Virus record (IMG/VR): IMGVR_UViG_3300023184_000026 | Location: 186,001 to 250,000 of that record | Direction: 5' to 3' (one strand) | DNA: 64,000 nt | Shown: positions 11,539 to 47,894 of the stretch, one piece after another | Position numbering within the stretch: position 1 is the stretch's first letter | Layout of the letters: every line of letters begins with the position of its first letter | Made by a program: the position numbers and the translations under genes | Notes under the pieces: generated by a model | Told to the model about the DNA's origin: nothing | What the model saw: only the letters and a program-made list of their open reading frames with translations | Database searches by the model: none

Positions 11539-11541
11539 TTT

Positions 11542-11638: not shown

Positions 11639-11823
11639 TTCAATTTATCCTTACTCAAAGAAGGAGGTAACTTACTCTTTGAAGGAGGATATCAGCGATG
11701 AACCCAAAAACAAGGAGGGAGTGGGCTCGGTTCCCATAATAGTGCGTGAAAGCTCGCACCATCGCACAATTTTAGTTTGACAAAATATAAAATACGTTCA
11801 TAGTTATGTATGTTCTTTTTCAG

Positions 11824-11909
11824 GCCAACTTCGCATAATCTGGCATTGCAGCACTTTTGTAAAGTGCCGTCGAAAGACATTATCGGTTCAAATCCGTTAG
11901 TTGGCTCCA
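11824..11909 (+). tRNA. tRNA-Thr(TGT) with long variable arm
   Basis: GCCAACT/AGTTGGC, GCACT-TTTGTAA-AGTGC, variable arm GTC-GAAA-GAC, GGTTCAAATCC, TCCA. Confidence 0.8.
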
Positions 11910-11963
11910 CTTTATTTATCTCATATCGCGATACTTATGTTTGTTCTTTTTACATTTTTATTT

Positions 11964-12076
11964 GAGGCGGCGGCGTGGAAGGACACGCAGCCTTTCGAGT
12001 CTATGACAACAAGAGACCCCGCTAAGTTGCGGTTAATTGGCGTTGTCAGTTGGTATCAATTCCAACCCGTCCTCTA
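11964..12076 (+). ncRNA. tRNA-like RNA with D and T arms but an expanded central region
   Basis: GAGGCGG/CCGTCCTC, GCGT-GGAAGGAC-ACGC, GTTGG-TATCAATT-CCAAC; centre TGACAAC/GTTGTCA and CCGC-TAAGTT-GCGG. Confidence 0.55.
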
Positions 12077-12081
12077 TTTTT

Positions 12082-12156
12082 GGCCCTATAGTTTATCGGT
12101 TAGAACATTCGGTTTTCATCCGGAAGGGCGGGATTCGATTTCCCGTAGGGCTACCA
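12082..12156 (+). tRNA. tRNA-Glu(TTC)
   Basis: GGCCCTA/TAGGGCT, TTCGG-TTTTCAT-CCGGA, CGGGA-TTCGATT-TCCCG, ACCA. Confidence 0.9.
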
Positions 12157-29203: not shown

Positions 29204-29986
29204 ATGTCAAAACAAAAACGACTGAACAACAACAAGAAAAAAAATAATGCACCAAGCCAAACATTATCTTTGTCTCAACAAACTACCAAAGATAAAAGTC
29301 CGGTTGTTCATCAAAGAAATAAAATAGATCATTATTTAACCATATTGCATAGAGAACTAACTCCGAAGCAGAAAGCTTTCATTGAGTTGGCAATGGATCG
29401 TAAAGTAAAACTGTTGCTCATATCTGGTCCGGCAGGTTCTACAAAAACATATTTGTCTGTACTAGCATCATTGATGCTCATGAATGAGAAAAAGGTCAGT
29501 GACATACTTTATGTACGAAGCATTGTTGAAAGTGCGGATGTTAAAATGGGCACATTACCCGGTGAAGCCGAAGACAAATTATCTCCATTCAAACGACCAC
29601 TGATAGACAAAATGGATGAACTTCTGCCAAAAGAAGATATTCAATATTTGATAAAAGAAAACAGAGTAGAAGGATTGCCAATTGGATATTTGAGAGGATT
29701 GAACTGGAATGCAAAAGCTGTGGTTGGAGATGAATTGCAGAATTGCACACAGAAAGAATTGATCACCATGATGACAAGAACCGGAGAATTTTGTAAAGTA
29801 TTTATGTGCGGAGATCCACAGCAATCTGACATTGGAACACGATCTGGTTTCAGAGATATATTCAATTTATTCAATGATGATGACAGCAAAGAAAATGGCA
29901 TATATACATTTGAATTTACAGATGATGACATTCTTCGCAGTGCATTGACCAAGTTTATTGTAAAAAAGATAAAAAGACTTGGGTAA
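29204..29986 (+). CDS. phoH: PhoH-family ATPase
   Basis: GPAGSTKT, MGTLPG, YLRG, DELQN, GDPQQSD, DILRS. Confidence 0.92.
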   Translation: MSKQKRLNNNKKKNNAPSQTLSLSQQTTKDKSPVVHQRNKIDHYLTILHRELTPKQKAFIELAMDRKVKLLLISGPAGSTKTYLSVLASLMLMNEKKVSDILYVRSIVESADVKMGTLPGEAEDKLSPFKRPLIDKMDELLPKEDIQYLIKENRVEGLPIGYLRGLNWNAKAVVGDELQNCTQKELITMMTRTGEFCKVFMCGDPQQSDIGTRSGFRDIFNLFNDDDSKENGIYTFEFTDDDILRSALTKFIVKKIKRLG

Positions 29987-30062
29987 TATAATAACTCTCA
30001 TTGAAAAAATGATATATATTTTGGTTGGTTATTGATATTTATAATCAAAAGATATCATTTTT

Positions 30063-32525
30063 ATGTCAAATCAGAAGACAACTGAATTACGCACGATTAG
30101 CGCAACCGATGTATCCAGAGGAGACTGGATTCCAATTGTGGATGTTAGTGAACTGACGAGTCCGACCGGAGAAACAAAAAAAATCTCAGCATCGGATTTG
30201 TCTGAGTATATTGTGTCCGGTGGCTTTGTAAATTACACCGTTCCGCAACATGGATATCAAAATTCAAATGGATTGTCTTTTGCACCGAATTTTGCTCCGT
30301 TGGATGAATTAAATATGCACTGTTATGGAAATGCTAATAATCTTGGAAACAATTTCTCTATCAACGTTCGTGCATTTATTCCATCCGATTCGTTGTTGAA
30401 TGATACTGGAAGTAGAGTATTATTCGGCGTAGGTTCGCAGGTTATAGGAATGGCAGATTATGGCACTCGTGCATATATCGGAGTTCAATCCAGCAGTTTG
30501 ATTGGATATGTGCACGATGGTGTGGTTGAAAAAATAATCGAATATCCGGATTTTATCAGAAAGTTTCCAAACAGGGCATTTGATGCAACTATAACAAAAG
30601 ATTATATTGGCAATTTCAAATTTTATGTAAATGCGGAATTGGTTGGAACATTGACCGGCATACCAAATGCCATAAATAGCTCGTATATAACAATGGGCAA
30701 TGGTCAGTCCGGAAGTCATTGGAATATCAACTGTGTAATTTATGAAGCTCATGTTTTTAATTCTGGATTGACAGGGGCGCAAGTTGCACAAAATTATTAT
30801 GGCGGAACAAGAAACAACGAAGCAACTCTTGTTTCATCATATCGTCCAGAGAATTTAAATCCCGGTCCAACGCAATGGTTGGATTCCGTGGGTGACAACC
30901 ACTTGCTTTTACCAAGAGCCGGTGCGGAGGCAACAAGTCCAAACAAGCAATTTGGATTGATATTTTTCAGCGACGGTACTTCCGGATATCTCGGAAATGG
31001 AACTCAACGAGATGTACTGCCAGACAATTATGTATTAACAGACTGCTTTGTGTATTCACCCGGTGCTCCACTGTTGTCGATAGGATCTACCGACGATGTT
31101 GCCTATGAAAATGCAAGTGGAATAGATTCATTCAATAACAACAGAGTTCCATTAGTAAGCGCGTCATACAGCAGAAATGTATTGCCGTTACTTGAACTTG
31201 GAGTTGTTCATAAGGACAAGAGCTTATATGTATTTTATAGTGCAAGTGCGGCACCATGCACTTTTAGTTTTCAAGGATACACGTCCAAATATGGAGCAAT
31301 CAATTACATTCCACCATCTCCGACGCCTACTCCTACTCCTACAATTACAATTACACCGTCGCCAATGCCGCCTACGCCGACGCCTACTATGACGGGCACG
31401 CCGACACCAACACCTCCACTTCCACCAGGAATATACTTAAGTGCAAACAGTTTCAGACTGGACGATGGTCCGTTCGTGTTTACCACGAATACAGCAATTA
31501 CATCACTCACTCGTTGGAAATTGAGAGCAAAGGTGGTCGAGTTGATTGGTGTAGATCCGCACTTGGCAAGAGAGCACATAGCAACCCGAACAGATGCTGG
31601 ATTTAATCAAAATTATTCTCCACTGAGTGTTCCACCGGTCGGAATATACAACACAGAACTATATTATGTGGAGTATGGAAATACACCAGATATATACGGA
31701 AATTATCCCGGTATTTCGGTAAACGGAGGCGCTCCATTTACACTTGTTACTATGAGTGTCGCAACTGCATCAACGTTTGTTGCTCCACTTTTTCCAGGAA
31801 CAAGTAATGTGTATTTGTCCGCATTAACATACTCACTCAACAATCCTCCATATGTTTACACGGGAAACACTTCTGTATTAAGTTATAATAGATACAAACT
31901 TCGTTGCAAAATTTCAGGCCAAAGTGGAGATGGTCTTTATTCTATCGCGAGCCCGGCGGCTGTTCACAGAACTGTTGCGTATAATAATAACTATTCCCAA
32001 ATAATACCACCCGCAGTTGGCGTCGTACCCGCTGAATTGTATTGGATCACATACGACAATGCTGGTAACGGAGCGGCACAGACATCGTCATGGAATTTTG
32101 TAACAATGTCATGCACAACGGCGTCTGGATTTTTGCCGGTTGCTCCACCGGCATATACTTCATCGGGACATCCCAATGTATATTTAAGTTATACAACGGG
32201 TAGTACAACAACGTTTAAAGGAAATAATCCTCCTTATATTTATACCACCGACCCAACTGTTCTTGCAGCATCCGCTACAGGATCTTACAGATTGCGATGC
32301 AAGATTTGGAAATGGCTTCCGGCAACTTCCGAATGGTCTCACTCCGGAGATCACTCAGCCGTTGCATGGAATAATCAATACGAGACAATACATCCACCAC
32401 TCGATTCCAGTTATGCATACAGATTTGAATTGTATTGGATAAAGTATTCAGATGGATTGTTTGGAAGCGCGGCCACAGTTTACAGCGGAACTCCATATTA
32501 TGTGTATCCAACAATCACTCCATAA
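30063..32525 (+). CDS. putative virion/tail-associated protein with LamG-like domain, Pro/Thr linker and three C-terminal repeats
   Basis: FYVNAELVG...IYEAHVFNSGLT; PTPTPTPT linker; 3x YLS...PY/FV...KLR-K...ELYW/Y. Confidence 0.7.
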   Translation: MSNQKTTELRTISATDVSRGDWIPIVDVSELTSPTGETKKISASDLSEYIVSGGFVNYTVPQHGYQNSNGLSFAPNFAPLDELNMHCYGNANNLGNNFSINVRAFIPSDSLLNDTGSRVLFGVGSQVIGMADYGTRAYIGVQSSSLIGYVHDGVVEKIIEYPDFIRKFPNRAFDATITKDYIGNFKFYVNAELVGTLTGIPNAINSSYITMGNGQSGSHWNINCVIYEAHVFNSGLTGAQVAQNYYGGTRNNEATLVSSYRPENLNPGPTQWLDSVGDNHLLLPRAGAEATSPNKQFGLIFFSDGTSGYLGNGTQRDVLPDNYVLTDCFVYSPGAPLLSIGSTDDVAYENASGIDSFNNNRVPLVSASYSRNVLPLLELGVVHKDKSLYVFYSASAAPCTFSFQGYTSKYGAINYIPPSPTPTPTPTITITPSPMPPTPTPTMTGTPTPTPPLPPGIYLSANSFRLDDGPFVFTTNTAITSLTRWKLRAKVVELIGVDPHLAREHIATRTDAGFNQNYSPLSVPPVGIYNTELYYVEYGNTPDIYGNYPGISVNGGAPFTLVTMSVATASTFVAPLFPGTSNVYLSALTYSLNNPPYVYTGNTSVLSYNRYKLRCKISGQSGDGLYSIASPAAVHRTVAYNNNYSQIIPPAVGVVPAELYWITYDNAGNGAAQTSSWNFVTMSCTTASGFLPVAPPAYTSSGHPNVYLSYTTGSTTTFKGNNPPYIYTTDPTVLAASATGSYRLRCKIWKWLPATSEWSHSGDHSAVAWNNQYETIHPPLDSSYAYRFELYWIKYSDGLFGSAATVYSGTPYYVYPTITP

Positions 32526-32530
32526 AGTGT

Positions 32531-32872
32531 ATGAAACGGCACATACATCCAAGAGGAAATCCAGAAAATTCCGTATTTGGAGTAGTTGGTAAATTTCTCG
32601 GGTCGGATAATGGTAATTATTATTCGAAAAGACGAGAGGACACTCGCAACAGTGGTTGGGATTTGTATGGAGACGACAATTCAACACAGACGCCCACTCC
32701 AACGCCAACACCAACACCAACACCGTCATATACACCACCCGTGACCAGAACTCCGACGTTGACTCCAACCACAACTACCACCAGAACTTTTACCCCGACG
32801 CTAACAGTGACGAGAACAAAAACTCCAACTCCAACCGCAACTCCAACCAAAACTATACCTTACTCTGTATAA
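32531..32872 (+). CDS. small Pro/Thr-rich protein
   Basis: GNPENSVFG...GW followed by long TP repeats. Confidence 0.7.
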   Translation: MKRHIHPRGNPENSVFGVVGKFLGSDNGNYYSKRREDTRNSGWDLYGDDNSTQTPTPTPTPTPTPSYTPPVTRTPTLTPTTTTTRTFTPTLTVTRTKTPTPTATPTKTIPYSV

Positions 32873-32875
32873 TTT

Positions 32876-33652
32876 ATGAACGAGAAATTGACAGTACATG
32901 GAAATCCCGAAAAATCAGTATTTGGACTGATTGGGTTGGATATTATTACGGACGAGGAAAAGCTCTATATAAAAGTTGAGAATGATAGTAAAAACACGGG
33001 TTGGAAAGAAATTCCACCAACACCATCACCCACACCAACCGTAACAGTAACTCCCACTAAAACTCCGATTGTTACAAAGTCGGTGCAAACTCCAACACCA
33101 ACCCCAACTATAACGAGGACACCCACGCAGACTCCTTCTGTGAGCCAAACTAGTCCACTAACGTCGCCGTCGCCTAGCAGTACCAGCAATAAAACATATT
33201 ACAATTATAATATAGTATCAAGTGGAGGCGGACAGGCAAACAGAATAGATGGACCAAATAGTGGCACGGTAAATGTTGGGTCGGGTTCAATGCAATTGAA
33301 GGCTGAAACCGATACTGGGTTTATATTCAGTGTGTGGACTGCTCCCGAAGGTGTAGTATTGTCAGATCCTTATTCGTTGAACCCGATTGCATATGGCTTT
33401 TATGTTTCCAGCAATTTTACAATCACTGCCAATTTTATATCAGACACTCCATCGCTTCCAACGTATAATATATACGCAACTGCCAATTGGCAGGGATATT
33501 TAGCCTATGAATATGTTGATAGTTTTGGCTCAGTACAGCAATCTTTCCAATATGGTTTTAGTCCCGGTCAAGTGATATCAAATGCTGGCTGTGCTAATCA
33601 AATAACAAGTGTGACATATGGTAGTGCGGAATTAACTGACCAATCGTGTTAA
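32876..33652 (+). CDS. Pro/Thr-rich protein, N-terminus paralogous to preceding gene
   Basis: GNPEKSVFG...LYIK...TGW, TP repeats, beta-rich C-terminus (GFIFSVWT...TITANF). Confidence 0.75.
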   Translation: MNEKLTVHGNPEKSVFGLIGLDIITDEEKLYIKVENDSKNTGWKEIPPTPSPTPTVTVTPTKTPIVTKSVQTPTPTPTITRTPTQTPSVSQTSPLTSPSPSSTSNKTYYNYNIVSSGGGQANRIDGPNSGTVNVGSGSMQLKAETDTGFIFSVWTAPEGVVLSDPYSLNPIAYGFYVSSNFTITANFISDTPSLPTYNIYATANWQGYLAYEYVDSFGSVQQSFQYGFSPGQVISNAGCANQITSVTYGSAELTDQSC

Positions 33653-33705
33653 AATTATTTATTATAGCTTGTATATATACAAGAACGTAGTAAACTAAAT
33701 GTTAT

Positions 33706-35010
33706 ATGAATTTTAATAAAAAAATATTTATTCAAATCGCGTCATATCGCGATCCGCAACTGGTGCCAACTATAAAGGATTGTATCGCAAATGCAAAATG
33801 GCCAGAAAATCTTGTGTTTTGCATTGCATGGCAACACTCACACGATGAAAAAATAGATGATATTAAAGATTTACCCAATGTAAAAATAATTGATATTCCA
33901 TACATGCAAAGCAAGGGAGCGTGTTGGGCGAGAAATCAAATTCAACAACAATATGATGGTGAAGAATATACTCTACAACTTGATTCACATCACAGGTTTG
34001 TAAAAGATTGGGATGAGGTCGTAATTGGCATGTATAAACAGCTTAAAAATATGGGCTACAATAAGCCATTGCTTACTGGATACATTCCGTCGTTTGATCC
34101 GGACAACGACCCAGATTCCAGAATACAAACTCCGTGGAGAATGGACTTTGATAGATTTATTCCAGAGGGTGCTGTTTTTTTTCTACCAGCGTCAATTGAC
34201 AATTGGAAGGATCTGTCGTCGCCCACACCCGCCAGATTTTACTCCGCACATTTTTGTTTCACGGGTGGAAAATTCTGCAAGGAAGTTCAGCACGATCCCG
34301 AATATTATTTTCACGGAGAAGAAATCAGCATTGCAGTTCGCGCATTTACTCATGGGTATGATCTTTTTCATCCACACCGTCTTGTGGCTTGGCATGAATA
34401 TACTCGCAAAGGTCGCGCCAAACATTGGGACGATCACTCGGCTTCTAATACAAGCAAAATTCCGGACAAAAAAGATTGGGGTGAAAGAAACCACCTATGC
34501 CATCGACGCAATCGCATATTGTTTTCAATGGATGGTGAAAAGCATGAAACAATTAATTGGGGAGTATATGGATTTGGAACTGAGAGAACGCTGCAAGATT
34601 ATGAAAAATACTCCGGTCTACATTTTGGAAAGCGTGCTGTTCAACAAGAAACTCTAGACAAGGCGTATCCACCAAATAAGAGTAGCAAATACAAAACCGA
34701 TGCTGAATGGGAGGATTCATTTCTTAAAATTTTTAAACATTGCATAGACCTTCCCATCAATCAATTTAAATTAAATGACTATGATTTTTGGTGCGTTGCA
34801 TTTGAGCGAGAAGATAACACAGTATTGTATCGGCAGGATGCTGATAAAGCAGAAATACAACGGTTGCTGGCGGAAGCCAGAGATCCATCTGGCGACAAGT
34901 ACATTAAACTTTGGAGAACATTCAATGCACCCGAGCAACCGCATCATTGGGTTGCATGGTCACACAGCGAATCAACTGGCTGGGGAGATAGAATTGTAGG
35001 AAATTTATGA
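33706..35010 (+). CDS. GT60-like (polypeptide/Skp1 GlcNAc-transferase family) glycosyltransferase
   Basis: IFIQIASYRD, SKGACWAR, LQLDSHHRF...WD, SAHFCF, FHGEE, R-FTHGYD, WHEY. Confidence 0.85.
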   Translation: MNFNKKIFIQIASYRDPQLVPTIKDCIANAKWPENLVFCIAWQHSHDEKIDDIKDLPNVKIIDIPYMQSKGACWARNQIQQQYDGEEYTLQLDSHHRFVKDWDEVVIGMYKQLKNMGYNKPLLTGYIPSFDPDNDPDSRIQTPWRMDFDRFIPEGAVFFLPASIDNWKDLSSPTPARFYSAHFCFTGGKFCKEVQHDPEYYFHGEEISIAVRAFTHGYDLFHPHRLVAWHEYTRKGRAKHWDDHSASNTSKIPDKKDWGERNHLCHRRNRILFSMDGEKHETINWGVYGFGTERTLQDYEKYSGLHFGKRAVQQETLDKAYPPNKSSKYKTDAEWEDSFLKIFKHCIDLPINQFKLNDYDFWCVAFEREDNTVLYRQDADKAEIQRLLAEARDPSGDKYIKLWRTFNAPEQPHHWVAWSHSESTGWGDRIVGNL

Positions 35011-35681
35011 TTGCGTTTTATAACAGAAAAGTCGCAGATGGGGGATTTTATATCAACATGGATCACCGAACTGATCGTAAAAAGCAGTGCGAAGACCAAT
35101 TTGCCAAGTTTGATATTTCTGGTATGGAAAGAATGGCTGGAATTGTTAAGGGGGAATACGCCGGTTGTGGAGAAGCACATAAAGAGATTATCAGGATTGC
35201 AATATCGCGCGGATGGAAATCTGTTCTAATTTGCGAAGATGATTTTTATGTGATGGACCCTCCGTCAACTGGGATTGGAGATTATTCATTACCATATAAA
35301 GAAACGATGTTCAAGTTTCTCGACCAAGCCGATAAGATAAATTGGGATGCTATGTTTTTTGGAACAATACTGCATTCTCCGTTAGTTAAGCTGGATGATA
35401 ATGTTGGAAAAATTCAATCTGCAAAATCCGCACATGCACTTGTTGTAAAAGAAAGTATGTATCAGGATATTCTTGATTGGTCATATGAAAAATATGATCA
35501 GCTTGATCATTATTATTATACAACTCTCCAGAAAACTCGCAACTTTATATCATCATATCCTATTCTAATCAATCACGGTTGGCCGCAGGAAGATATGTCG
35601 GATTTATTGAAACGTAAAACAACATATCATTATTATACTACGTCAACATACGCGGAATTTGCTGGAGAATTTAGAAAATGA
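35007..35681 (+). CDS. glycosyltransferase family 25-like
   Basis: YINMDHRTDR, GC...H, VLICEDD, SAHA. Confidence 0.8.
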   Translation: MIAFYNRKVADGGFYINMDHRTDRKKQCEDQFAKFDISGMERMAGIVKGEYAGCGEAHKEIIRIAISRGWKSVLICEDDFYVMDPPSTGIGDYSLPYKETMFKFLDQADKINWDAMFFGTILHSPLVKLDDNVGKIQSAKSAHALVVKESMYQDILDWSYEKYDQLDHYYYTTLQKTRNFISSYPILINHGWPQEDMSDLLKRKTTYHYYTTSTYAEFAGEFRK

Positions 35682-37279
35682 ACATTATTTCAATGCACGG
35701 TTCGCACAATGGATCTGTTGCATTTAATGTTGGTGACAAAATATATGTAGTTGAAATGGAACGCTTCAATGGCTATAAGAATTCCGGTATAAGCCAATAC
35801 AAGTCTATTCCAAACGCAGATATTCAACTTAAGAATATCTGTGAAATGATAAAACGCAGATATGGTATAGATAAATTTGATGTATGTGTTACCAGCTATT
35901 CGCACTCAATAAATATCATCAATGGCGAAAGCATATATGTGAAATATGAAGATAATATTCCACACGCAACGCCGCTGCATGATTTGACGCACCAATATCT
36001 TCATGCAATAGGTGCATATTATCAGTCTCCATATGAAAAGATGCTAATAATTTCTTTTGATGGTGGTGGGAATGATGGATTTTTCAATGGTTATGTTTGT
36101 GAAAGCAAGAAAGAAGCTCCAAAGCTGCTGTTCTCGGCGAAATATGATATGGGTGCATATATGACGTTTGGTCATTATTTAAAACCAATAATGCAAGAAA
36201 GTGGATTTGATGATGGCAATCTTGTATATAGTGGCAAGCTGATGGGGCTGTGTGGATACGGAAATGTGCGAGAAGAATGGTTGGAAGCATTTCGCCAATT
36301 TTACAGAACTGAAGTTTATAGTAAGAATATTCAAGAAAAACTTGCAGAACTGGGTCCAAAGGTTGGATTAAAGTTTAATTCAAATGATAGATTTGATGGT
36401 GACATTGCATATGACATCGCAGCAACTTCTCAAAAGGCATTTGAGGATGTATTCTTTGAAGTTACAGACCAGTATTTTGATAAGTATAAAGATTATGCTA
36501 TAGGCATGACCGGTGGATGTGCATTGAATGTATTGTTGAATACAGAAATCAAAAAAAGATATAACCGTCCAATGTTTGTTCCACCAAATCCAAGTGATTG
36601 TGGATTGGCGGTTGGAGGATTGTTGCATGTAATGAAGCCGGAAAAACCAATTGAAGTTATGTATTCCGGTATGCCATTATTGGACATTGACTCGGTTGGA
36701 TATTACATCTATGAGCATTCATATAATTGCGATATCAAACACAATACGCCGGTCGATGAACTGGCGAGATATATTTGTAATGGTAAGATAGTCGGCGTTG
36801 CTCGTGGAAATGCCGAGCACGGTCCAAGAGCACTTGGCAACAGAAGCATTTTTTGCGATCCAAGTTTTCCACATATGAAAGATGTGCTCAATGCTAAAGT
36901 AAAAAATAGAGAATGGTACAGACCATTTGCACCGGTTGTAAGAATTGAGGACGCCGTTAAATATTTCGAGGCATGTCAGGAATCTCCATATATGAGCTTT
37001 GCTTTCAAGGTTCTCCAAGAATATGCAGAAAAGTTGAAATCAATAACACACATTGATGGCACGGCGAGAGTACAAACATTGAAGAGAGAAATAAATCCTT
37101 GGCTATATGATCTGATAGGAGAGGTTGAAAAGATAAATGGTATAGGCGTATTGTTAAATACCAGCTTTAATGTGAATGGCAAGCCGATACTATCTACGGT
37201 CAAAGAAGCATTTAATGTATTTGATAATACACAGATGGACGGGCTGATAATCGAAGACACTTTTATTAAAAAACGTTGA
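35678..37279 (+). CDS. carbamoyltransferase (NodU/CmcH family)
   Basis: HNGS, ERF, DGGG, GKLMGL, GGCALN, D-GLA-G, EHGPRALGNRS, REWYRPFAP, HIDGTARVQ, LNTSFN. Confidence 0.93.
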   Translation: MNIISMHGSHNGSVAFNVGDKIYVVEMERFNGYKNSGISQYKSIPNADIQLKNICEMIKRRYGIDKFDVCVTSYSHSINIINGESIYVKYEDNIPHATPLHDLTHQYLHAIGAYYQSPYEKMLIISFDGGGNDGFFNGYVCESKKEAPKLLFSAKYDMGAYMTFGHYLKPIMQESGFDDGNLVYSGKLMGLCGYGNVREEWLEAFRQFYRTEVYSKNIQEKLAELGPKVGLKFNSNDRFDGDIAYDIAATSQKAFEDVFFEVTDQYFDKYKDYAIGMTGGCALNVLLNTEIKKRYNRPMFVPPNPSDCGLAVGGLLHVMKPEKPIEVMYSGMPLLDIDSVGYYIYEHSYNCDIKHNTPVDELARYICNGKIVGVARGNAEHGPRALGNRSIFCDPSFPHMKDVLNAKVKNREWYRPFAPVVRIEDAVKYFEACQESPYMSFAFKVLQEYAEKLKSITHIDGTARVQTLKREINPWLYDLIGEVEKINGIGVLLNTSFNVNGKPILSTVKEAFNVFDNTQMDGLIIEDTFIKKR

Positions 37280-37280
37280 T

Positions 37281-38978
37281 ATGAACTTTAATACAACACT
37301 AGTTACTGGATTATTTGATTTAAAGCGAGGTGAATTGGATACTGGATTTAAGCGTCCATTTAGCCAATACCTACAGCATTTTGATAAGTTGCTCAGGGCA
37401 TGTAAAAATGTTCCAATGGTAGTTTATGTAGATCCTGCACATGTAGATTTTATAAATATCGCCAGACAAGGATCTGTTGGTACAGATATAAGAACAAAAA
37501 GTGCCGATGATTTTCGTAAATGGTTTTCATTTTATGAAAAAGTAAATACTATAAGACAAGATCCAAATTGGTATAATCAGGTTGGATGGCTCGCCGAATC
37601 AACTCAAGCAAAACTAGATTTATACAATCCTTTAGTCATGAGCAAAATGTTCATGCTCAATGACGCGGCTATATTTAACCCATTTGATTCAGAAAACTAT
37701 TGCTGGATAGATGCCGGACTTACACAAACCGTGCATCCCGGTTATTTCAGTCACGATAATGTAATAGAAAAAATTGAACCATTGCTCAATAAATTTTTGT
37801 ATGTATGTTTTCCATATGAAACCGAGACAGAAGTTCATGGCTTTAAAATTGATGGTATGAATAAATATGCTAACGCCAAAGTCAATCGAGTTGCTAGAGG
37901 AGGATTTTTTGGAGGCAACAAGAAAATTTTGAGTCAAATGAACGGAATATATTACAATCTTCTGAATGATTCTTTGAGTGACGGATATATGGGAACTGAA
38001 GAAAGTATATTTACACTCATCACATATACAAATCCGGAATTGGTAAATGTTGAAATGATCAATAATGATGGACTCATGTCTACATTTTTTGAAAAAGTAA
38101 AAAAACTTCCAATTCCCAAACGCGAAGTTAGTATATCAACCGTTGATGTTCCAGAAGGAGTTGAATATTTTCAAAGCGAAAAAGAAGTTGATATGAACAA
38201 GTCTGGAAAGGGGACCAATCTTTATATCACTTGCTTCAATATTCCACAGCAGCTTCAATTGCTATTGGACAGTATTGAAAAATATAATCCAGAACTATTA
38301 ACATCTACAAACAAGTATCTGATTGATAATAGCATTGACGAAAGTACTAGACCCGCGTTTAATGAAATTGTAAAAAAATATAAATTTGAATTAATACGCA
38401 AGGGAAATATGGGTGTGTGTGGTGCAAGACAGTGGGCAGCTCAACATTTTCATGATAGCAAAGCTAAATATATCGTGTGGTTTGAAGATGATATGCTCAT
38501 GGAAAACAAAAATATTCTTTGTAAAAATGGATTGAATATGCATTGTGACAACTGGCTCGACAAATGTATCAAAATAATTGAAGAAGAAAAATTAGACTTT
38601 ATTAAGATTTCGTTTAGTGAATTTTTTGGAGATCATCACAAGCAATGGGCTTGGCATAATGTTCCACAAAACATTAAGAATAGATATTTTCCAGATGGCA
38701 CACATAAAATGACATGGAAAAATTCTGGCTGTATTGATGGATTAAGTTATTTAATTGGAGATGTTTACTATAGCAATTGGCCAAGCGTTATGACAAAAGC
38801 TGGTAATTATAAGATATTTTTGGAAACTGTGTATGCTTCGCCTTTTGAGCAGACAATAATGTCGCAAGCATATCAGATAATGAAGAAAGGAAGATTGAGA
38901 AGTGCAGTGTTGATGGCAAGTTTGGTGAACCACAACAGAGTTCATCATTATGCAAAAGATATAAGAAAAGAAGTTTGA
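37281..38978 (+). CDS. HtrL/YibB-like domain fused to a GT-A glycosyltransferase domain
   Basis: TLVTGLFD, SKMFML...NPFDS...WIDAG, GGFFGG, TEESI; C-half GNMGVCGARQ...WFEDD. Confidence 0.75.
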   Translation: MNFNTTLVTGLFDLKRGELDTGFKRPFSQYLQHFDKLLRACKNVPMVVYVDPAHVDFINIARQGSVGTDIRTKSADDFRKWFSFYEKVNTIRQDPNWYNQVGWLAESTQAKLDLYNPLVMSKMFMLNDAAIFNPFDSENYCWIDAGLTQTVHPGYFSHDNVIEKIEPLLNKFLYVCFPYETETEVHGFKIDGMNKYANAKVNRVARGGFFGGNKKILSQMNGIYYNLLNDSLSDGYMGTEESIFTLITYTNPELVNVEMINNDGLMSTFFEKVKKLPIPKREVSISTVDVPEGVEYFQSEKEVDMNKSGKGTNLYITCFNIPQQLQLLLDSIEKYNPELLTSTNKYLIDNSIDESTRPAFNEIVKKYKFELIRKGNMGVCGARQWAAQHFHDSKAKYIVWFEDDMLMENKNILCKNGLNMHCDNWLDKCIKIIEEEKLDFIKISFSEFFGDHHKQWAWHNVPQNIKNRYFPDGTHKMTWKNSGCIDGLSYLIGDVYYSNWPSVMTKAGNYKIFLETVYASPFEQTIMSQAYQIMKKGRLRSAVLMASLVNHNRVHHYAKDIRKEV

Positions 38979-39139
38979 TACATATAGTCTCATGTGTGTG
39001 ACAAAATGATACACATAAAATATGTATTTTTTATTAATTACGAGGTAAACGGTGTGACACAATATTTGGCACGAAACATGATAATGTGTATATGTCGGTG
39101 TTCATAATGAAGCCGATATAAATAAAGGATACAATAAAT

Positions 39140-39586
39140 ATGTCACTAACTAAATACACACGGGATGAGTTTCTCACCCCTTTTAATAGATTGTTTGATG
39201 AAGTTTTCAATAACTTCGGAGTAACACCATATATAGGTTCATATACAAAAACCAGTTTTCCAAAAGTGGATGTGGTTGAGTATATAGATAAACTTGTGCT
39301 AGAAGCAGATGTTGCTGGACTAGACAAAGAAGATGTGAGTGTTGAACTAGAAGGCGATACTCTAACCATTCGTGGTGGAAAGAAGCCAGCATCAACTGAA
39401 ACAGACAATAATGCTCGTTATGTTTATAGAGAAATAAAGCGTTCAAGTTTTGTTCGCTCTTTTGCTGTTGGCGAAGGTATTGATAAAAGTAAAATAAAGG
39501 TTGATTATCAAAATGGAGCAATCAAGATTATATTGCCCAGAATTAAAATTGAAGAACAAAAGCCACAAAAAGTCAAATTGCTATAA
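39140..39586 (+). CDS. small heat-shock protein Hsp20
   Basis: PKVDV, ADVAGLDKEDV, LTIRG, REIKRSSFVRSF, YQNGAIKIILP. Confidence 0.93.
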   Translation: MSLTKYTRDEFLTPFNRLFDEVFNNFGVTPYIGSYTKTSFPKVDVVEYIDKLVLEADVAGLDKEDVSVELEGDTLTIRGGKKPASTETDNNARYVYREIKRSSFVRSFAVGEGIDKSKIKVDYQNGAIKIILPRIKIEEQKPQKVKLL

Positions 39587-39708
39587 GATAAGTGTTGACA
39601 ATTGATAAAATTTTATACATTATATCATTTGTAAAGGTTATATAAAGTTCCAGTTCTTATGATAATTGGATGGTGGAGGGTGATATTGAGTTCAATCGCC
39701 CCTAATTA

Positions 39709-39735
39709 AGCCCCACAGAAATGTGGGGTTTTTTT
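39709..39735 (+). terminator. intrinsic terminator
   Basis: CCCCACA-GAAA-TGTGGGG plus T7. Confidence 0.8.
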
Positions 39736-39788
39736 GTCGTTTTTTGTGAGTTGTATATATTTATTGTTGTAACTTTATACAAAAATAT

Positions 39789-40397
39789 ATTAAAAAATCG
39801 GAATTAAAGCAGTTGATTAGAGAAGTTGTGCAAGAAGTATATTCTCAACAAGACGAAGGTATTATGGACTTTATAAAAAACCCGTTTGGAAAAAATACCG
39901 GCTCAACCGGCAAGAGATCTGACCCAAAAAATATTAAAGAAATTTACGAAAATAATTCCAAAGCAATTAAGGACATTGTAGCGGCCTTAGACCGCAAACG
40001 TCACGAAATTAAAAATCAATTGTATAAATTAGAGGCAAATGGTATCGATTGGTATGCAAATCGAACCAGCGACGGTGGATACGAGCAGAACAGCGGCGCT
40101 AACCAACGTATTTGGAATCCCGACAGGGCAGAACAAGGAAATGCGGCCTCTAAAACAAGATTTCAAGAAAAAACAAAACAATTAAAAGAATTGATACATT
40201 TTATAGAAGGGACGGCTGGGTTTGTGAGAGAATTTGAGCGCTTTCAAGAAGAATCTGTTATCACTAAACCCTATAGAATAAATAGTAGTGTATATGTCAA
40301 AGATCTCAATGATTATGTCGAAAAAATATCCGATAGCCTTCGTCGTTATGGTCTTGATACCGCATCGAAATTGTTAAAACAATTTCCTTCGGCATAA
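39789..40397 (+). CDS. hypothetical protein with KKSELKQLIRE leader; apparent ATT start
   Basis: ATT AAA AAA TCG GAA TTA AAG CAG TTG ATT AGA GAA parallels the ATG start of 62387. Confidence 0.7.
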   Translation: MKKSELKQLIREVVQEVYSQQDEGIMDFIKNPFGKNTGSTGKRSDPKNIKEIYENNSKAIKDIVAALDRKRHEIKNQLYKLEANGIDWYANRTSDGGYEQNSGANQRIWNPDRAEQGNAASKTRFQEKTKQLKELIHFIEGTAGFVREFERFQEESVITKPYRINSSVYVKDLNDYVEKISDSLRRYGLDTASKLLKQFPSA

Positions 40398-40442
40398 CCT
40401 GTTATCGCAGGCGTGAATAAAATATAATACATATTTTACACC

Positions 40443-40483
40443 AAAAGAACCCCAAACATAAAGTTTGGGGTTCTTTTTTTTTT
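40443..40483. terminator. bidirectional-type intrinsic terminator
   Basis: AAAAGAACCCCAAAC-loop-GTTTGGGGTTCTTTT plus T run. Confidence 0.8.
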
Positions 40484-40508
40484 ATAATATATACTATACT
40501 TATATACT

Positions 40509-42077
40509 ATGAACTTTTTAGCATTTTTAGTATTATTGAGTGCAATAGCAATATCTGCGTGTGGCGCGTATTTTAGTATCGTTGGTTTAAAGTTGTTGTT
40601 TGTTGGCGGCGGCATATCAATTATAATAATGGGAAGTGCTCTTGAAATTGGTAAAATTATCACTGCCACATTTCTCAAACAAAAATGGAATGACATAAAT
40701 ATCCTCATGAAAACATATATGGTAATTGCAACCATATTTCTCATGGGTATAACATCAGTTGGTATTTACGGATATTTAAGTGCGGGATATACGGCTACAA
40801 ACATTGCAGTGCAAGGATATGAACAGCAAATAGAATCAAATAATATAAAAGTTGCGGAGATAAACAGTGAAATAGACATCATAAAGAAGTCTGATTATAA
40901 TGCGGATGAAATTGCTGCCGCTGATGTCAATAGAAAGAAGTTTATAGAACAAAAACTTCAAGTAGTTGCACAAAAAAATCAACAAATTGAAAACATACGT
41001 AAAACAGCAAATACAAACAAGGATGCGTCTTCTGACGTAATGGCAGCAAAACAGGCACTTGAGATTTCAAAATCATCATCTGACAATGACATATCCAGAG
41101 AACTTGAACAAATCAAACTGTATAATACACGTTTGGAAATATTGGACAAAGAGATGCAGAAATGGATGGAAGAAGGAACTGGTGGATTGTTTAAAAAGAA
41201 TGGGTTGGACAAGGCCAGAACGGTTAAAGATGGACAATCTAAAGAACGCTCAGACATAGATGCTCAGATTAAATCTTCACAAGATAGAATTGAAAAATTA
41301 CGTTCTCAGTACGCTTTGCAAGTCAAAGCATACAACGACAGAGTTTCTGAAATAGAAAACAGAAGCAATTCGCAAAGAGGTGAAATAGAATCAAATATCA
41401 AAAAAATTGAAAAAGAAAACGATGAAATAATGACATCAATTGATGTATACAACAAAGAATCCGACAGTAAGGTAGTATCTTTGAATTCTAAAAAAACAGA
41501 ATTGATTGAAGATGGGAAGAAAAAAATATCGGAATATAGAAAAAGTATACAGGATCTAAAAAATGAAAACACAACAATAAAAGAAAAAATTGTTCACACG
41601 GACGTTGGTACATTCAAGTTCATCGCAAACAGTTTGGGTATTCCGTTGGATAAAGCGGTAAATTATTTCATATGGTCAATCATGGCGGTTTTTGATCCGC
41701 TTGCAATAGCGTTGGTTCTGGCCTTCAACACAATGTTGAAAAATAAAGATGATATGCAACTTGCAATTGTTCCAACACTGACGCCGGAACCTACACCCAC
41801 TCCAACACCCACTCCAACACCAAGCGTCACTCCAACACAGACAATAACTCCAACCCCAACGATAACAGAAACTCCAAGTACCACCCCAATTGAAACCGCA
41901 ACTCCAACCCCAACTCCAACGAAAACATCAGAACCAACATCAGGTTCCGAAGTCACCAAGGATAATTACGAAATGGCATTGAGAAATATGGTAGAATCGG
42001 TAATAATAAATCAATCGCCACCAGTGCCGTCTCCTATATTAAGAGAATCTGAGTATTTCAGTCGCCCACAACCATAA
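40509..42077 (+). CDS. membrane-anchored coiled-coil protein with Pro/Thr tail
   Basis: Three N-terminal TM segments (SIVGL, LEIGK, TSVGIYGYLS), long coiled coil, VFDPLAI TM, TP repeats. Confidence 0.8.
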   Translation: MNFLAFLVLLSAIAISACGAYFSIVGLKLLFVGGGISIIIMGSALEIGKIITATFLKQKWNDINILMKTYMVIATIFLMGITSVGIYGYLSAGYTATNIAVQGYEQQIESNNIKVAEINSEIDIIKKSDYNADEIAAADVNRKKFIEQKLQVVAQKNQQIENIRKTANTNKDASSDVMAAKQALEISKSSSDNDISRELEQIKLYNTRLEILDKEMQKWMEEGTGGLFKKNGLDKARTVKDGQSKERSDIDAQIKSSQDRIEKLRSQYALQVKAYNDRVSEIENRSNSQRGEIESNIKKIEKENDEIMTSIDVYNKESDSKVVSLNSKKTELIEDGKKKISEYRKSIQDLKNENTTIKEKIVHTDVGTFKFIANSLGIPLDKAVNYFIWSIMAVFDPLAIALVLAFNTMLKNKDDMQLAIVPTLTPEPTPTPTPTPTPSVTPTQTITPTPTITETPSTTPIETATPTPTPTKTSEPTSGSEVTKDNYEMALRNMVESVIINQSPPVPSPILRESEYFSRPQP

Positions 42078-47483: not shown

Positions 47484-47894
47484 ATGGTAACTCCGTCACA
47501 GACATATGGAATATTATTGCCTATAACTCATGGGCCGCAGGGATTTTTTAATTCAAGCTATGACATTCTCGAACAGATAAAAAGCAACCTTAATGTACTT
47601 TTGAGAACGAGAAAAGGCGAGCGTAGAATGAATCCGGAATTTGGATCTGGTTTGTGGAACATCTTGTTTGAAAATTATACAGATGATATTACCCCTATGG
47701 TAAAAAATTCCATACAAAGAGATATTGCAAAATGGATGAGTTATGTAAAAATTCAAGACATTCAAATTTATACCAGTAGCGCGGAATACAAAGACAAAAA
47801 CAAAGTTGGAGTAAAAGTATTATTCACGGTACCAAGTGCGGGTATCAACAAAACACAAACCATCGAAGTTGCCGTAAATTCTGGAAATATATGA
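47484..47894 (+). CDS. baseplate wedge protein, gp25/GPW family
   Basis: QIKSNL..LL.T.KGER.M.PEFGSGL...LFE. Confidence 0.88.
   Translation: MVTPSQTYGILLPITHGPQGFFNSSYDILEQIKSNLNVLLRTRKGERRMNPEFGSGLWNILFENYTDDITPMVKNSIQRDIAKWMSYVKIQDIQIYTSSAEYKDKNKVGVKVLFTVPSAGINKTQTIEVAVNSGNI

What the first reader, a model, noticed from the sequence alone, without database searches (positions are those of the whole stretch)
30063..38978. Candidate mucin-type virion glycosylation system: Pro/Thr-repeat proteins directly upstream of GT60-like, GT25-like, carbamoyltransferase and HtrL-GT genes
Seen: three consecutive genes with (PT)n/Thr-rich tracts (30063, 32531, 32876; a fourth at 40509) are followed by a tightly coupled four-gene run (ATGA overlaps at 35007 and 35678). 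Known: GT60 enzymes are polypeptide alpha-GlcNAc transferases (Dictyostelium Skp1 GlcNAc-T; trypanosome mucin-initiating enzymes acting on Thr-rich peptides), GT25 enzymes extend glycans, and NodU/CmcH enzymes O-carbamoylate sugars. Inference: initiate-extend-decorate pathway building a carbamoylated O-glycan on virion proteins (shielding, stability or receptor binding). Alternatives: host-surface modification, or DNA modification by the carbamoyltransferase.
Basis: partly seen in the sequence, partly recalled or inferred. Interest (0 to 1): 0.75.

Follow-up and report, generated by a model that had tools for sequence, protein, structure and literature searches.

The report
Phage mucin-type protein glycosylation cassette
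A freshwater jumbo phage carries a glycosyltransferase operon, led by a relative of the enzymes that start mucin-type O-glycosylation, right beside its only Pro/Thr-tract proteins, and this pairing recurs across many related phages, so the phage probably sugar-coats its own proteins.

Summary
Window 30063-42077 holds four of the only five Pro/Thr-tract genes in a 297-kb lake jumbo phage. Three lie directly upstream of an overlapping four-gene operon: GT60 (PF11397, E 2e-71), GT25-like, NodU/TobZ-type O-carbamoyltransferase, and an HtrL_YibB protein with a second domain.

Evidence for protein O-glycosylation of the PT tracts:
- The GT60 model (pLDDT 95) is closest to polypeptide GalNAc-transferases (Z 20-22.5) and has their DxH motif.
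- In 76 distinct related phage loci, the gene just upstream of GT60 has a PT tract in 38/71 cases, against 4% of distant genes. These PT proteins fall in at least 8 unrelated families.
- Eight GT60-positive genomes carry (TP)4 repeats. Three GT60-negative relatives (834 kb) carry none.
- The fifth PT gene abuts a second glycosyltransferase cassette.
- The cultured relative XacN1, with the same cluster, has stained virion glycoproteins.

The conserved core is GT60 plus the HtrL-like protein. The genes between them, including the carbamoyltransferase, vary between phages. DNA modification is unlikely because the genome has no ThyA or TET homologue. Host-surface remodelling is less likely because the enzymes are soluble. 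Virion location, sugar identity and carbamoylation remain inferred. I rate it a new variant of a known kind, with confidence about 0.6.

The parts
30063..32525 (+). 820-aa candidate substrate. It has an N-terminal LamG/ConA-like lectin domain (about aa 1-410), a PT tract, and then three divergent repeats of about 120 aa. It has no signal peptide or TM segment.
   Evidence: ORF. Weak Laminin_G_3 hit, E 0.0017. The separate 411-aa homologue in L012 hits the same family at E 1.8e-5. Atlas neighbours are viral LamG proteins. No TM segment. Repeats were seen by eye in the sequence printed.
31299..31436 (+). PT tract of the 820-aa protein (aa 412-458)
   Evidence: Composition scan; hexamer tandem repeats at 31318-31355.
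32531..32872 (+). 113-aa protein: a 45-aa N-terminal motif (HGNPExxVFG...NxGW) followed by a PT/Thr-rich tail (tract about 32666-32782)
   Evidence: Start at the ATG is supported by homologues in L007-L010. Hits phrog_15511 through the tract only.
32876..33652 (+). 258-aa paralogue: the same N-terminal motif, a PT tract (33005-33157), and a C-terminal domain of about 150 aa
33706..35010 (+). GT60-like retaining GT-A glycosyltransferase and predicted initiating polypeptide HexNAc transferase. Catalytic domain is aa 1-317 with DxH at D93-S94-H95. It also has a beta-rich C-terminal domain at aa 340-434.
   Evidence: PF11397 E 2.1e-71. phrog_24687 E 1e-171. AF2 model pLDDT 95.3. Top 37 Foldseek hits and top 29 VIA-align entries are all ppGalNAc-T, Z up to 22.5. 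D93 and H95 are invariant.
35007..35681 (+). GT25-like glycosyltransferase (invariant EDD motif at E77-D78-D79), predicted glycan extension
   Evidence: The window's own Pfam hit is sub-threshold. 18 of 20 homologues pass PF01755. The profile hits PDB 9crz 'putative glycosyltransferase R655' at 1e-17, procollagen galactosyltransferase 1 at 1.7e-15 and a bacterial GT25 at 7e-12. ATGA overlap with the upstream gene.
35678..37279 (+). NodU/CmcH/TobZ-type O-carbamoyltransferase (Kae1-like N domain plus YrdC-like C domain), predicted to O-carbamoylate a sugar hydroxyl
   Evidence: Carbam_trans_C E 8e-63 and Carbam_trans_N E 4e-20. phrog_1601 E 6e-116. PDB matches include 7xb6, TobZ, the novobiocin carbamoyltransferase and GdmN. 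The motif 'GPRALGNRS' is TobZ-like.
37281..38978 (+). Two-domain protein: HtrL_YibB domain (aa 4-257) plus a C-terminal domain of about 260 aa with an invariant E402-D403-D404 motif, possibly GT-A-like. It is the conserved partner of GT60.
   Evidence: PF09612 E 5.7e-16. Atlas shows a viral family of more than 3000 members, with sister clusters carrying PF00535. 68 distinct homologues lie next to GT60 in relatives. Conserved motifs. The fold was not obtained.
40509..42077 (+). 522-aa membrane protein (TM segments within aa 1-90 and at 384-410, with a long coiled coil between) and a C-terminal PT tract (41760-41945). It is a possible further substrate but probably not a virion protein.
   Evidence: Homologues with a PT tail lie just past the cassette in L027, L058 and L061. 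SMC-like coiled-coil hit.

Best explanation
The operon 33706-38978 encodes four soluble, cytoplasmic enzymes. I propose that they build a short O-linked glycan on Thr (and Ser) residues of the Pro/Thr tracts of phage proteins encoded beside it: 30063, 32531 and 32876, and possibly 40509.

Step 1 is inferred from family, fold and motif. The GT60-like enzyme is a retaining GT-A transferase with the DxH metal site. It would transfer a HexNAc, most likely alpha-GlcNAc from UDP-GlcNAc, onto Thr in the extended PT peptide. This is what protist polypeptide alpha-GlcNAc transferases and animal ppGalNAc-transferases do on mucin domains.

Step 2 is inferred. The GT25-like enzyme and the two-domain HtrL-like protein would add further sugars.

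Step 3 is inferred. The TobZ/NodU-type enzyme would use carbamoyl phosphate and ATP to O-carbamoylate a sugar hydroxyl.

The genes between GT60 and the HtrL-like gene differ from phage to phage (other GT-A enzymes, FkbM methyltransferases, carbamoyltransferase), so related phages would make different glycans on the same kind of stalk.

The substrates combine small globular or lectin/adhesin-like domains with mucin-like PT stalks and have no signal peptides. They are therefore probably glycosylated in the cytoplasm and then mounted on the virion exterior as fibres or whiskers. There the glycan would stiffen and protect the linkers or mediate adhesion.

Shown here: gene content, family membership, fold, and the statistical link between PT genes and the cassette. 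Inferred: acceptor, donor, order of steps, virion location and biological role.
For: 1. Family and fold. PF11397 E 2e-71. The AF2 model has pLDDT 95. Residues 1-317 superpose on ppGalNAc-T catalytic domains at Z 20-22.5, and the best other GT-A reaches 17.5. The DxH motif is invariant, and DxH is the GT27/GT60 hallmark (PMC7185993). GT60 enzymes are polypeptide alpha-GlcNAc transferases acting on Ser/Thr-rich domains (PMC8724618).

2. Within the genome. Only five PT-tract ORFs exist in 297 kb. Four flank this operon. The fifth sits directly upstream of a second cassette of GT2, FkbM methyltransferases and a GT10-like gene.

3. Across phages. In 76 distinct GT60 loci (58-100% identity), PT tracts occur in 46-51% of loci in the 2 kb upstream, against 0-15% elsewhere. 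The gene at offset -1 has a tract in 38/71 loci, against 17/427 distant genes (Fisher P 2.6e-24). Near versus far per-gene rates are 27% and 3.9%, or 0.19 and 0.03 when averaged over 31 sequence clusters. Flanking PT proteins fall in at least 8 homology groups with at least three unrelated N-terminal domains. Some carry LamG, PKD, InlB-B-repeat or DUF285 domains.

4. Genome-level co-occurrence. (TP)4 repeats occur in 8 of 8 GT60-positive genomes. They occur in 0 of 3 GT60-negative relatives, totalling 834 kb.

5. The enzymes are soluble. Only 1 of 307 cassette proteins has a TM-like segment, against 72 of 765 flanking proteins.

6. The cultured relative XacN1 has the same cluster, with ORF334 as the GT60 homologue at 49% identity. 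Its virion proteins gave at least two periodic-acid-Schiff-positive bands, and its authors proposed phage-encoded glycosylation (PMC5852040).

7. The GT25-like profile's nearest solved relatives include procollagen galactosyltransferase, a protein-glycosylating enzyme.

8. An independent lineage points the same way. Burkholderiales GT60 genes sit in T6SS clusters next to VgrG spikes that carry PT tracts.

9. Pieces of the operon occur in lake metatranscriptome assemblies.
Against: There is no biochemical evidence for this phage, and no bacterial or phage GT60 has been characterised.

The PT link is not universal. 28 of 76 loci have no PT gene within two genes of the block. One GT60-positive genome (G003) has only two (TP)4 hits, both far from the cassette.

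In the Xanthomonas phages most PT genes lie far from the cluster. The PhoH-to-PT-protein synteny exists there without the cassette beside it, so part of the adjacency in this window may be inherited gene order.

Loci are phylogenetically related, so the P values overstate independence.

GT25 and HtrL_YibB families are otherwise known from LPS/LOS loci (PMC4172580).

In 28 of 76 loci a family-B DNA polymerase lies 4.5-7.6 kb downstream.

The 522-aa PT protein is a membrane protein.

PT linkers can function unglycosylated.

RNA-library contigs may derive from carried-over DNA.
Confidence: 0.6

Rival explanations
1. Host envelope remodelling. The enzymes would modify the host's LPS/LOS core or another surface glycan during infection, for example to block superinfection. 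The PT proteins would be unrelated neighbours.
For: GT25 and HtrL_YibB are typical of LPS/LOS outer-core loci (PMC4172580). LPS core glycosyltransferases are soluble or peripheral enzymes, so the absence of TM segments does not exclude this reading. A jumbo-phage review interprets variable phage glycosyltransferase clusters as surface-polysaccharide modifiers (PMC7824862). O-carbamoylated LPS sugars exist (own knowledge).
Against: This reading does not explain the 7-fold enrichment of PT-tract genes beside the cassette, nor the genome-level co-occurrence of 8/8 against 0/3. The lead enzyme belongs to a polypeptide-glycosylating family and fold. The cassettes contain no flippase, polymerase or lipid-carrier transferase: 1 of 307 proteins has a TM-like segment. 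The same module occurs in phages of very different hosts (Xanthomonas, unknown freshwater hosts), whose LPS cores differ.
Confidence: 0.13
2. DNA hypermodification. The glycosyltransferases and the carbamoyltransferase would decorate hydroxymethyl-pyrimidines in phage DNA to evade restriction.
For: A phage carbamoyltransferase of this superfamily makes 5-carbamoyloxymethylcytosine (PMC8670742). Phage glycosyltransferases can glycosylate 5hmC (bioRxiv 2023.12.21.572611). A DNA polymerase lies near the cassette in 28 of 76 loci and in the Xanthomonas phages.
Against: This genome has no ThyA-family gene, so no dCMP or dUMP hydroxymethylase. It has ThyX instead and no Tet/JBP hit. The known 5hmC carbamoyltransferases co-occur with ThyA homologues; carbamoyltransferases on unmodified contigs sit beside glycosyltransferases. 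At the discriminating positions (TobZ G421/R423) the window enzyme reads G/R like TobZ, whereas the characterised DNA enzyme reads C/T. In four other GT60-positive genomes the ThyA homologue is at least 75 kb from the cassette and has the Asn ('PFNIAS') that marks dUMP rather than dCMP specificity. The carbamoyltransferase is absent from most cassettes.
Confidence: 0.05
3. The PT tracts are plain, unglycosylated flexible linkers. The cassette would make a free or small-molecule glycoconjugate, and the adjacency would reflect a shared hypervariable 'accessory' region of these genomes.
For: PT linkers are widespread and work without sugar in many bacterial proteins (own knowledge). Carbamoyltransferases of this family act on antibiotics and Nod factors (NodU hit). 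The region between PhoH and the baseplate genes holds auxiliary genes such as Hsp20 and peptide deformylase.
Against: Large structural proteins elsewhere in this window (1576 aa and 1120 aa) have no PT tracts, so PT tracts are not this phage's general linker. PT genes of unrelated families recur at the same position relative to GT60. GT60-negative relatives lack (TP)4 repeats altogether. The cassettes contain no aglycone-building enzymes such as PKS, NRPS or aminotransferases.
Confidence: 0.12

Closest known systems
CAZy GT60 polypeptide alpha-GlcNAc transferases of protists (Dictyostelium, Trypanosoma cruzi) and the related GT27 animal ppGalNAc-transferases
   Same: Pfam family PF11397. GT-A fold closest to the GT27 catalytic domain (Z 22.5). 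DxH instead of DxD. Predicted acceptors are Thr/Pro-rich mucin-like tracts.
   Different: This enzyme is encoded by a bacteriophage, is soluble and cytoplasmic, and has no Golgi anchor. It carries its own beta-rich C-terminal domain of about 95 aa instead of the ricin lectin domain of GT27. It is partnered with an HtrL_YibB protein. Its activity is untested.
Virion glycosylation in mycobacteriophages (Che8 and relatives; Freeman et al. 2023, as summarised in PMC11256854) and self-encoded glycosylation in chloroviruses and mimiviruses
   Same: Virus-encoded cytoplasmic glycosyltransferases decorate the virus's own structural proteins. Tailoring enzymes (methyltransferases and others) vary between strains. 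The GT25-like profile's best solved relative is a glycosyltransferase named R655, which by my own knowledge is a mimivirus protein.
   Different: The initiating family (GT60) and the substrate design are different: dedicated PT-stalk proteins encoded next to the cassette, rather than the capsid or tail-tube subunits. The hosts are not actinobacterial. The glycan may be carbamoylated.
Xanthomonas jumbo phage XacN1 (ORF334-ORF330) and Xoo-sp13 (gp304-gp300)
   Same: Homologous GT60 (49-51% identity), carbamoyltransferase (42%) and HtrL-like protein (43%) in the same order. The genomes are rich in TP-repeat proteins. XacN1 virions contain Schiff-positive glycoproteins.
   Different: Their carbamoyltransferase is 765 aa. 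Two unrelated genes replace the GT25-like gene. Most PT genes lie far from the cluster. The published work only suggested that the glycosyltransferases might glycosylate virion proteins and did not link them to PT tracts.
O-carbamoyltransferases TobZ, NodU/NolO, NovN and CmcH
   Same: Two-domain architecture and conserved YrdC-like motifs. Their substrates are sugar or antibiotic hydroxyls.
   Different: It is far below the NodU equivalog cut-off (155 bits against 1000). It sits in a protein-glycosylation context. The acceptor is unknown.

Membership tests
GT60 / Pfam PF11397 (polypeptide alpha-GlcNAc transferase) | Sequence match above the curated Pfam threshold | tested here: met
   241.7 bits against a cut-off of 21, E 2.1e-71.
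GT60 / Pfam PF11397 (polypeptide alpha-GlcNAc transferase) | DxH metal-binding motif replacing DxD (shared only with GT27) | tested here: met
   D93-S94-H95 in 'QLDSHHRF'. D93 and H95 are invariant in 39 sequences. The motif's significance is taken from PMC7185993.
GT60 / Pfam PF11397 (polypeptide alpha-GlcNAc transferase) | GT-A fold nearest to the GT27 ppGalNAc-T catalytic domain | tested here: met
   VIA-align Z 20-22.5 over about 275 residues for 29 ppGalNAc-T entries. The next fold class reaches Z 17.5 or less. Foldseek E 2e-9.
GT60 / Pfam PF11397 (polypeptide alpha-GlcNAc transferase) | Transfers GlcNAc from UDP-GlcNAc to Thr, Ser or Hyp of a polypeptide | not testable with these tools
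   Only indirect support is available, from the association with PT-tract genes. The docking attempt gave no answer.
GT25 (Pfam PF01755) | Sequence match above the curated threshold | tested here: inconclusive
   The window protein scores 17 bits against a cut-off of 24. 18 of 20 aligned homologues match at E <= 0.01, best E 4e-20. The profile hits GT25 structures at 1e-17 to 7e-12. The EDD motif is invariant.
NodU/CmcH/TobZ O-carbamoyltransferases | Both Carbam_trans_N and Carbam_trans_C domains present, with the GPRALG.RS motif | tested here: met
   72.9 and 211.4 bits. The alignment to TobZ and 7xb6 shows the motif conserved.
NodU (NCBIfam NF041651 equivalog) | Score above the equivalog cut-off | tested here: not met
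   155.5 bits against a cut-off of 1000. It belongs to the same superfamily but is not a NodU orthologue.
Phage 5hmC carbamoyltransferase / DNA hypermodification system | Genome encodes a hydroxymethyl-pyrimidine source (ThyA-family hydroxymethylase or TET/JBP dioxygenase) | tested here: not met
   No PF00303 hit. ThyX only. No PF12851 hit, although the control genomes were also silent for that family.
Phage 5hmC carbamoyltransferase / DNA hypermodification system | Residues at TobZ positions 421 and 423 differ from sugar carbamoyltransferases (C/T in the characterised enzyme) | tested here: not met
   The window enzyme has G/R ('GPRALGNRS') like TobZ. The DNA enzyme printed in PMC8670742 has 'GPRALCNTT'.
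HtrL_YibB (PF09612 / TIGR02192) | Domain match | tested here: met
   PF09612 scores 59.4 bits against 24.1 over residues 4-257. The TIGR02192 equivalog cut-off is not reached (61 against 265), so this is a family member and not a YibB orthologue. The function of the family is unknown.
Host O-antigen/capsule conversion systems (Gtr, Wzx/Wzy-dependent) | Membrane components: flippase, polymerase, lipid-carrier transferase | tested here: not met
   None of the four enzymes has a TM segment. 1 of 307 cassette proteins in 61 loci has a TM-like segment.
Phage virion glycosylation (mycobacteriophage type) | Glycan covalently attached to virion proteins, dependent on phage glycosyltransferases | not testable with these tools
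   Only precedent is available: Schiff-positive virion bands in XacN1, which carries the homologous cluster.

The most novel reading that the evidence does not exclude
The GT60 plus HtrL-like module may be a widespread prokaryotic and phage counterpart of eukaryotic mucin-type O-glycosylation. It would act in the cytoplasm and be dedicated to Pro/Thr stalks of contractile-machine and fibre proteins: phage whiskers or fibres and, in Burkholderiales, T6SS VgrG spikes. Hypervariable tailoring cassettes (methyl, carbamoyl, extra sugars) would give each phage lineage its own surface glycan.
Probability: 0.3. Interest if true: 0.8.

Novelty: new variant of a known kind. Interest (0 to 1): 0.66.

Why it matters
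Self-encoded glycosylation of virions is established for giant algal and amoebal viruses and, recently, for a few mycobacteriophages. It is regarded as rare in phages.

This module is abundant. More than 7,500 GT60 homologues were found in public data, and the HtrL-like partner forms a viral cluster of more than 3,000 members. The phage recurs in lake metagenomes from 2017 to 2024.

If confirmed, many environmental jumbo phages would display mucin-like, variably decorated glycoproteins. That would bear on virion stability, adhesion and host recognition, and on how PT 'linkers' in phage proteins are interpreted. It would also supply a soluble, single-polypeptide Thr-glycosylating enzyme with a simple acceptor motif. 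Such an enzyme is attractive for glycoengineering in bacteria.

Culturable carriers (XacN1, Xoo-sp13) make the idea directly testable.

Tried and rejected
- Complex prediction of GT60 with the 113-aa PT protein gave no answer (score 0.00, partner pLDDT 24). This is neither support nor evidence against.
- Megablast of the region against GenBank phages found no match.
- phmmer and profile searches of the GT60 and HtrL-like proteins against PDB sequences found nothing significant.
- hhalign of the HtrL-like profile against the GT60 and GT25-like profiles was not significant (probabilities 1.4% and 2.4%). A GT-A fold for the HtrL-like C-terminal domain therefore rests only on its EDD motif and on Atlas neighbours.
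- A prolyl-hydroxylase route (Hyp-linked sugar, as on Skp1) has no support, because the genome has no 2OG-FeII_Oxy_3 hit.
- Literature searches for PF11397 with phage, or for mucin-like or threonine-rich phage glycoproteins, found nothing relevant.
- Freeman et al. 2023 could not be read.
- The promoter and terminator scan gave no convincing signal inside 30063-38978. Strong terminators appear only at 39708-39731 and 40443-40477. This is compatible with co-transcription but is weak evidence.

Full report
WHAT IS THERE

The window is bases 186001-250000 of a 297,258-bp virus record rated 100% complete. It is a jumbo phage. Its sequence recurs in freshwater and lake metagenomes from 2017 to 2024. 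By baseplate-wedge similarity its nearest cultured relatives are a Microcystis phage and Flavobacterium phages. The host is unknown.

PhoH (29204-29986) is followed on the + strand by these genes:
- An 820-aa protein.
- A 113-aa protein.
- A 258-aa protein.
- Four tightly packed genes, 33706-38978, with ATGA overlaps at 35007 and 35678 and a 1-nt gap at 37280.
- Hsp20.
- A 194-aa ORF.
- A 522-aa protein.
- Peptide deformylase.
- From about 47.9 kb, baseplate genes.

PT TRACTS

I used a simple composition rule: a 20-aa window with at least 5 Pro, at least 6 Thr and at least 14 Pro+Thr+Ser. Only five ORFs in all six frames of the whole genome carry such a tract, and four lie between 30063 and 42077. 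A (TP)4 DNA pattern gives 21 forward-strand hits against 1 for the reversed control.

The 113-aa and 258-aa proteins share a 45-aa N-terminal motif and are paralogues. The 820-aa protein has a LamG/ConA-like N-terminal half, then the tract, then three divergent C-terminal repeats. None of these three has a signal peptide or TM segment. The 522-aa protein is different. It has TM segments at both ends of a long coiled coil and a C-terminal PT tail.

THE ENZYMES

33706-35010 is a clear member of PF11397, the Pfam family corresponding to CAZy GT60 (E 2e-71), and matches a phage family over its full length (phrog_24687).
- An AlphaFold2 model built on 39 homologues has mean pLDDT 95.3.
- Its catalytic domain superposes on polypeptide GalNAc-transferases (GT27) at Z 20-22.5 for 29 entries. 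The best other GT-A enzymes reach 17.5.
- D93-x-H95 is invariant. [quoted passage not shown]
- A beta-rich C-terminal domain (aa 340-434) is specific to the phage and HtrL-linked clade. Burkholderiales homologues stop matching near residue 340-386.

35007-35681 is only marginally GT25 on its own. However, 18 of 20 homologues pass Pfam. Their profile finds the structure of a glycosyltransferase named R655, procollagen galactosyltransferase 1 and a bacterial GT25 (E 1e-17 to 7e-12). An EDD motif is invariant.

35678-37279 is a two-domain O-carbamoyltransferase of the TobZ/NodU/NovN/GdmN kind.

37281-38978 has an HtrL_YibB domain (aa 4-257) and a second domain with an invariant EDD motif. Language-model neighbours are a viral family of more than 3,000 members, and some sister clusters carry GT2 domains. 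I could not obtain its fold.

COMPARATIVE TEST

I fetched 92 IMG/VR loci with a GT60 homologue (58-100% identity), which gave 76 distinct GT60 sequences.

Architecture:
- PT-tract gene(s), then GT60, then one to seven variable genes, then the HtrL-like gene. Another PT gene often follows.
- 61 of 76 loci show GT60 followed by the HtrL-like gene.

The variable genes include GT25-like and other GT-A enzymes, a PLOD-GT-like enzyme, FkbM and other methyltransferases, and DUF3431. A carbamoyltransferase is present in only a handful of lineages.

Position of PT tracts:
- They occur in 46-51% of loci in the two 1-kb bins upstream of GT60.
- They occur in 0-4% of loci inside the cassette.
- They occur in 4-15% of loci further away.

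By gene position:
- The immediate upstream gene has a tract in 38 of 71 loci, against 17 of 427 genes four or more positions upstream (odds ratio 28, P 2.6e-24).
- The loci are related, so I also averaged over 31 clusters of GT60 sequences at 80% identity or more. The PT rate per gene is then 0.19 beside the block and 0.03 away from it.

The flanking PT proteins are not one family. After masking the tracts they fall into 21 homology groups, 8 of them among the upstream neighbours. At least three unrelated small N-terminal domains are each followed directly by a PT tract, often in a beads-on-a-string layout. Some carry PKD, InlB-B-repeat, DUF285 or LamG domains typical of adhesins.

The link is not universal. 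28 of 76 loci have no PT gene within two genes of the block.

GENOME-LEVEL TEST

All eight GT60-positive genomes examined contain (TP)4 repeats:
- This genome.
- XacN1 (30 hits at one mismatch or fewer) and Xoo-sp13 (72 hits at two or fewer).
- Five further IMG/VR genomes (2-26 hits).
- Reversed-pattern controls give 0-1 hits.

Three GT60-negative relatives chosen by baseplate similarity have none in 834 kb and no PF11397.

Within this genome, the fifth and only other PT gene lies at genome 61548-62198, outside the window. It is followed directly by a GT2, two unknown genes, an FkbM methyltransferase, a GT10-like protein, a second methyltransferase and DUF6395. Every PT gene of this phage therefore abuts a glycosyltransferase cassette.

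EXPERIMENTAL PRECEDENT

Xanthomonas phages XacN1 and Xoo-sp13 and two Stenotrophomonas phages carry the GT60 homologue at 47-51% identity. In XacN1 and Xoo-sp13 it is followed by a carbamoyltransferase, two unknown genes and the HtrL-like protein.

The XacN1 paper reports at least two periodic-acid-Schiff-positive bands among virion proteins. It suggests that the phage's glycosyltransferases (ORF328 and ORF334) make them (PMC5852040). ORF334 is the GT60 homologue.

XacN1's 3313-aa ORF325 sits beside the baseplate wedge genes, 3 kb from the cluster, and carries TP repeats. Xoo-sp13 encodes a 'mucin-16-like protein' right after PhoH. That is the same PhoH-to-PT-protein order as in the window, although the cassette there is 110 kb away.

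RIVALS

DNA hypermodification.
- In favour: a phage carbamoyltransferase that makes 5-carbamoyloxymethylcytosine is known (PMC8670742).
- Against: such enzymes co-occur with ThyA-type dCMP hydroxymethylases. This genome has no ThyA-family gene, only ThyX, and no TET/JBP hit.
- Against: the window enzyme keeps TobZ-like residues where the DNA enzyme differs.
- Against: in four other GT60-positive genomes the ThyA homologue is at least 75 kb from the cassette and has the Asn that marks dUMP specificity. The fifth was not resolved.
- In favour, and worth recording: a DNA polymerase lies 4.5-7.6 kb downstream in 28 of 76 loci.

Host-surface remodelling.
- In favour: GT25 and HtrL are LOS-locus families, and core glycosyltransferases are soluble, so this stays possible.
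- Against: it does not explain the PT association, and the cassettes lack any membrane component.

Hydroxyproline route.
- It has no support, because the genome has no P4H-type oxygenase.

EXPRESSION

Contigs from three lake metatranscriptome libraries cover parts of the 258-aa gene and all four enzyme genes. X18 and X19 carry a 96-97% identical strain, and X20 holds identical pieces. DNA carry-over cannot be excluded. No strong terminator lies inside 30063-38978.

CONCLUSION

The best reading is a phage-encoded, cytoplasmic, mucin-type O-glycosylation system. A GT60 enzyme would initiate on PT stalks of dedicated phage proteins. A conserved HtrL-like two-domain protein and a variable set of tailoring enzymes (here GT25-like and an O-carbamoyltransferase) would finish the glycan.

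What is shown: family membership, fold and the genomic association. What is inferred: acceptor, donor, carbamoylation of the glycan, virion location and function. The published XacN1 suggestion did not connect the enzyme family with PT tracts or recognise the conserved module. I therefore rate this a new variant of a known kind, with confidence about 0.6.

Noticed in passing
genome G000:C1:61548-69500 (outside the window; L102:7549-15469): This is a second PT-to-glycosyltransferase locus. The genome's only other PT-tract gene (216 aa) is followed directly by a GT2, two unknown genes, an FkbM methyltransferase, a GT10-like fucosyltransferase homologue, a second FkbM-like methyltransferase, DUF6395 and a P-loop kinase. 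rIIA and rIIB lie just upstream.
   Followed up: partly
L135:2878-13131 (Ralstonia sp. 25C chromosome), L139 (Achromobacter) and about 20 other Burkholderiales loci L131-L169: Bacterial GT60 homologues sit at the end of type VI secretion blocks: TssF, TssG, TssA, a fimbrial-like protein and GT60. A convergent Rhs protein and a VgrG spike follow. The VgrG C-terminal part carries a PT tract in 6-7 loci. No control set of T6SS clusters without GT60 was examined.
   Followed up: partly
L105, L109, L113, L116, L121 and others (Saprospiraceae, Gemmatimonadota MAGs): The GT60 plus HtrL-like gene pair also occurs on contigs of bacterial genome assemblies, some longer than 1 Mb. The pair is therefore not phage-only. 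Short MAG contigs may be phage DNA binned with bacteria.
   Followed up: no
window 29204-32525; Xoo-sp13 record 107422-111639 (L020): PhoH is followed by a large PT-tract protein both here and in Xoo-sp13, where it is annotated 'mucin-16-like protein'. In Xoo-sp13 the glycosyltransferase cluster is 110 kb away.
   Followed up: partly
window 40509-42077; L027, L058, L061: A membrane protein (N-terminal TM bundle, about 290-aa coiled coil, a further TM segment, C-terminal PT tail) recurs just downstream of the cassette in distant relatives. Its role is unknown.
   Followed up: no
window 10133-12156: A cluster of six tRNA genes: Arg-TCT, Met-CAT, Ile-TAT, Lys-TTT, Thr-TGT and Glu-TTC.
   Followed up: no
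window 32600-33110: In lake DNA and RNA assemblies the (TP)n-coding repeats attract contigs from many other organisms (word depth 174 against 27.7). They also give 'skip' joints between the tracts of the 113-aa and 258-aa genes (32721 to 33086, sides of only 21-23 letters). These may be repeat-driven assembly artefacts or real length variants.
   Followed up: no
L014:5506-8262 and 27 other loci; L003, L021: A family-B DNA polymerase lies 4.5-7.6 kb downstream of GT60 in 28 of 76 loci, and a DNA polymerase lies about 5 kb upstream in the Xanthomonas phages. The cassette therefore often borders the replication module.
   Followed up: partly
window 58077-61439 and 51413-56143: A 1120-aa protein carries FG-GAP repeats and a dockerin-type motif. 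A 1576-aa protein has no family hits. Both lie downstream of the baseplate wedge gene (47891-49846) and have no PT tracts.
   Followed up: no
window 39708-39731 and 40443-40477: Two strong intrinsic-terminator-like hairpins (10 and 15 bp stems with T runs) follow Hsp20 and the 194-aa ORF. None of comparable strength lies within 30063-38978.
   Followed up: no
G004:C1:31500-32291 (L187): The ThyA-family homologue of one GT60-positive genome lacks the canonical 'PFN' and 'PCH' motifs found in the other four. I did not examine whether it is a hydroxymethylase.
   Followed up: no
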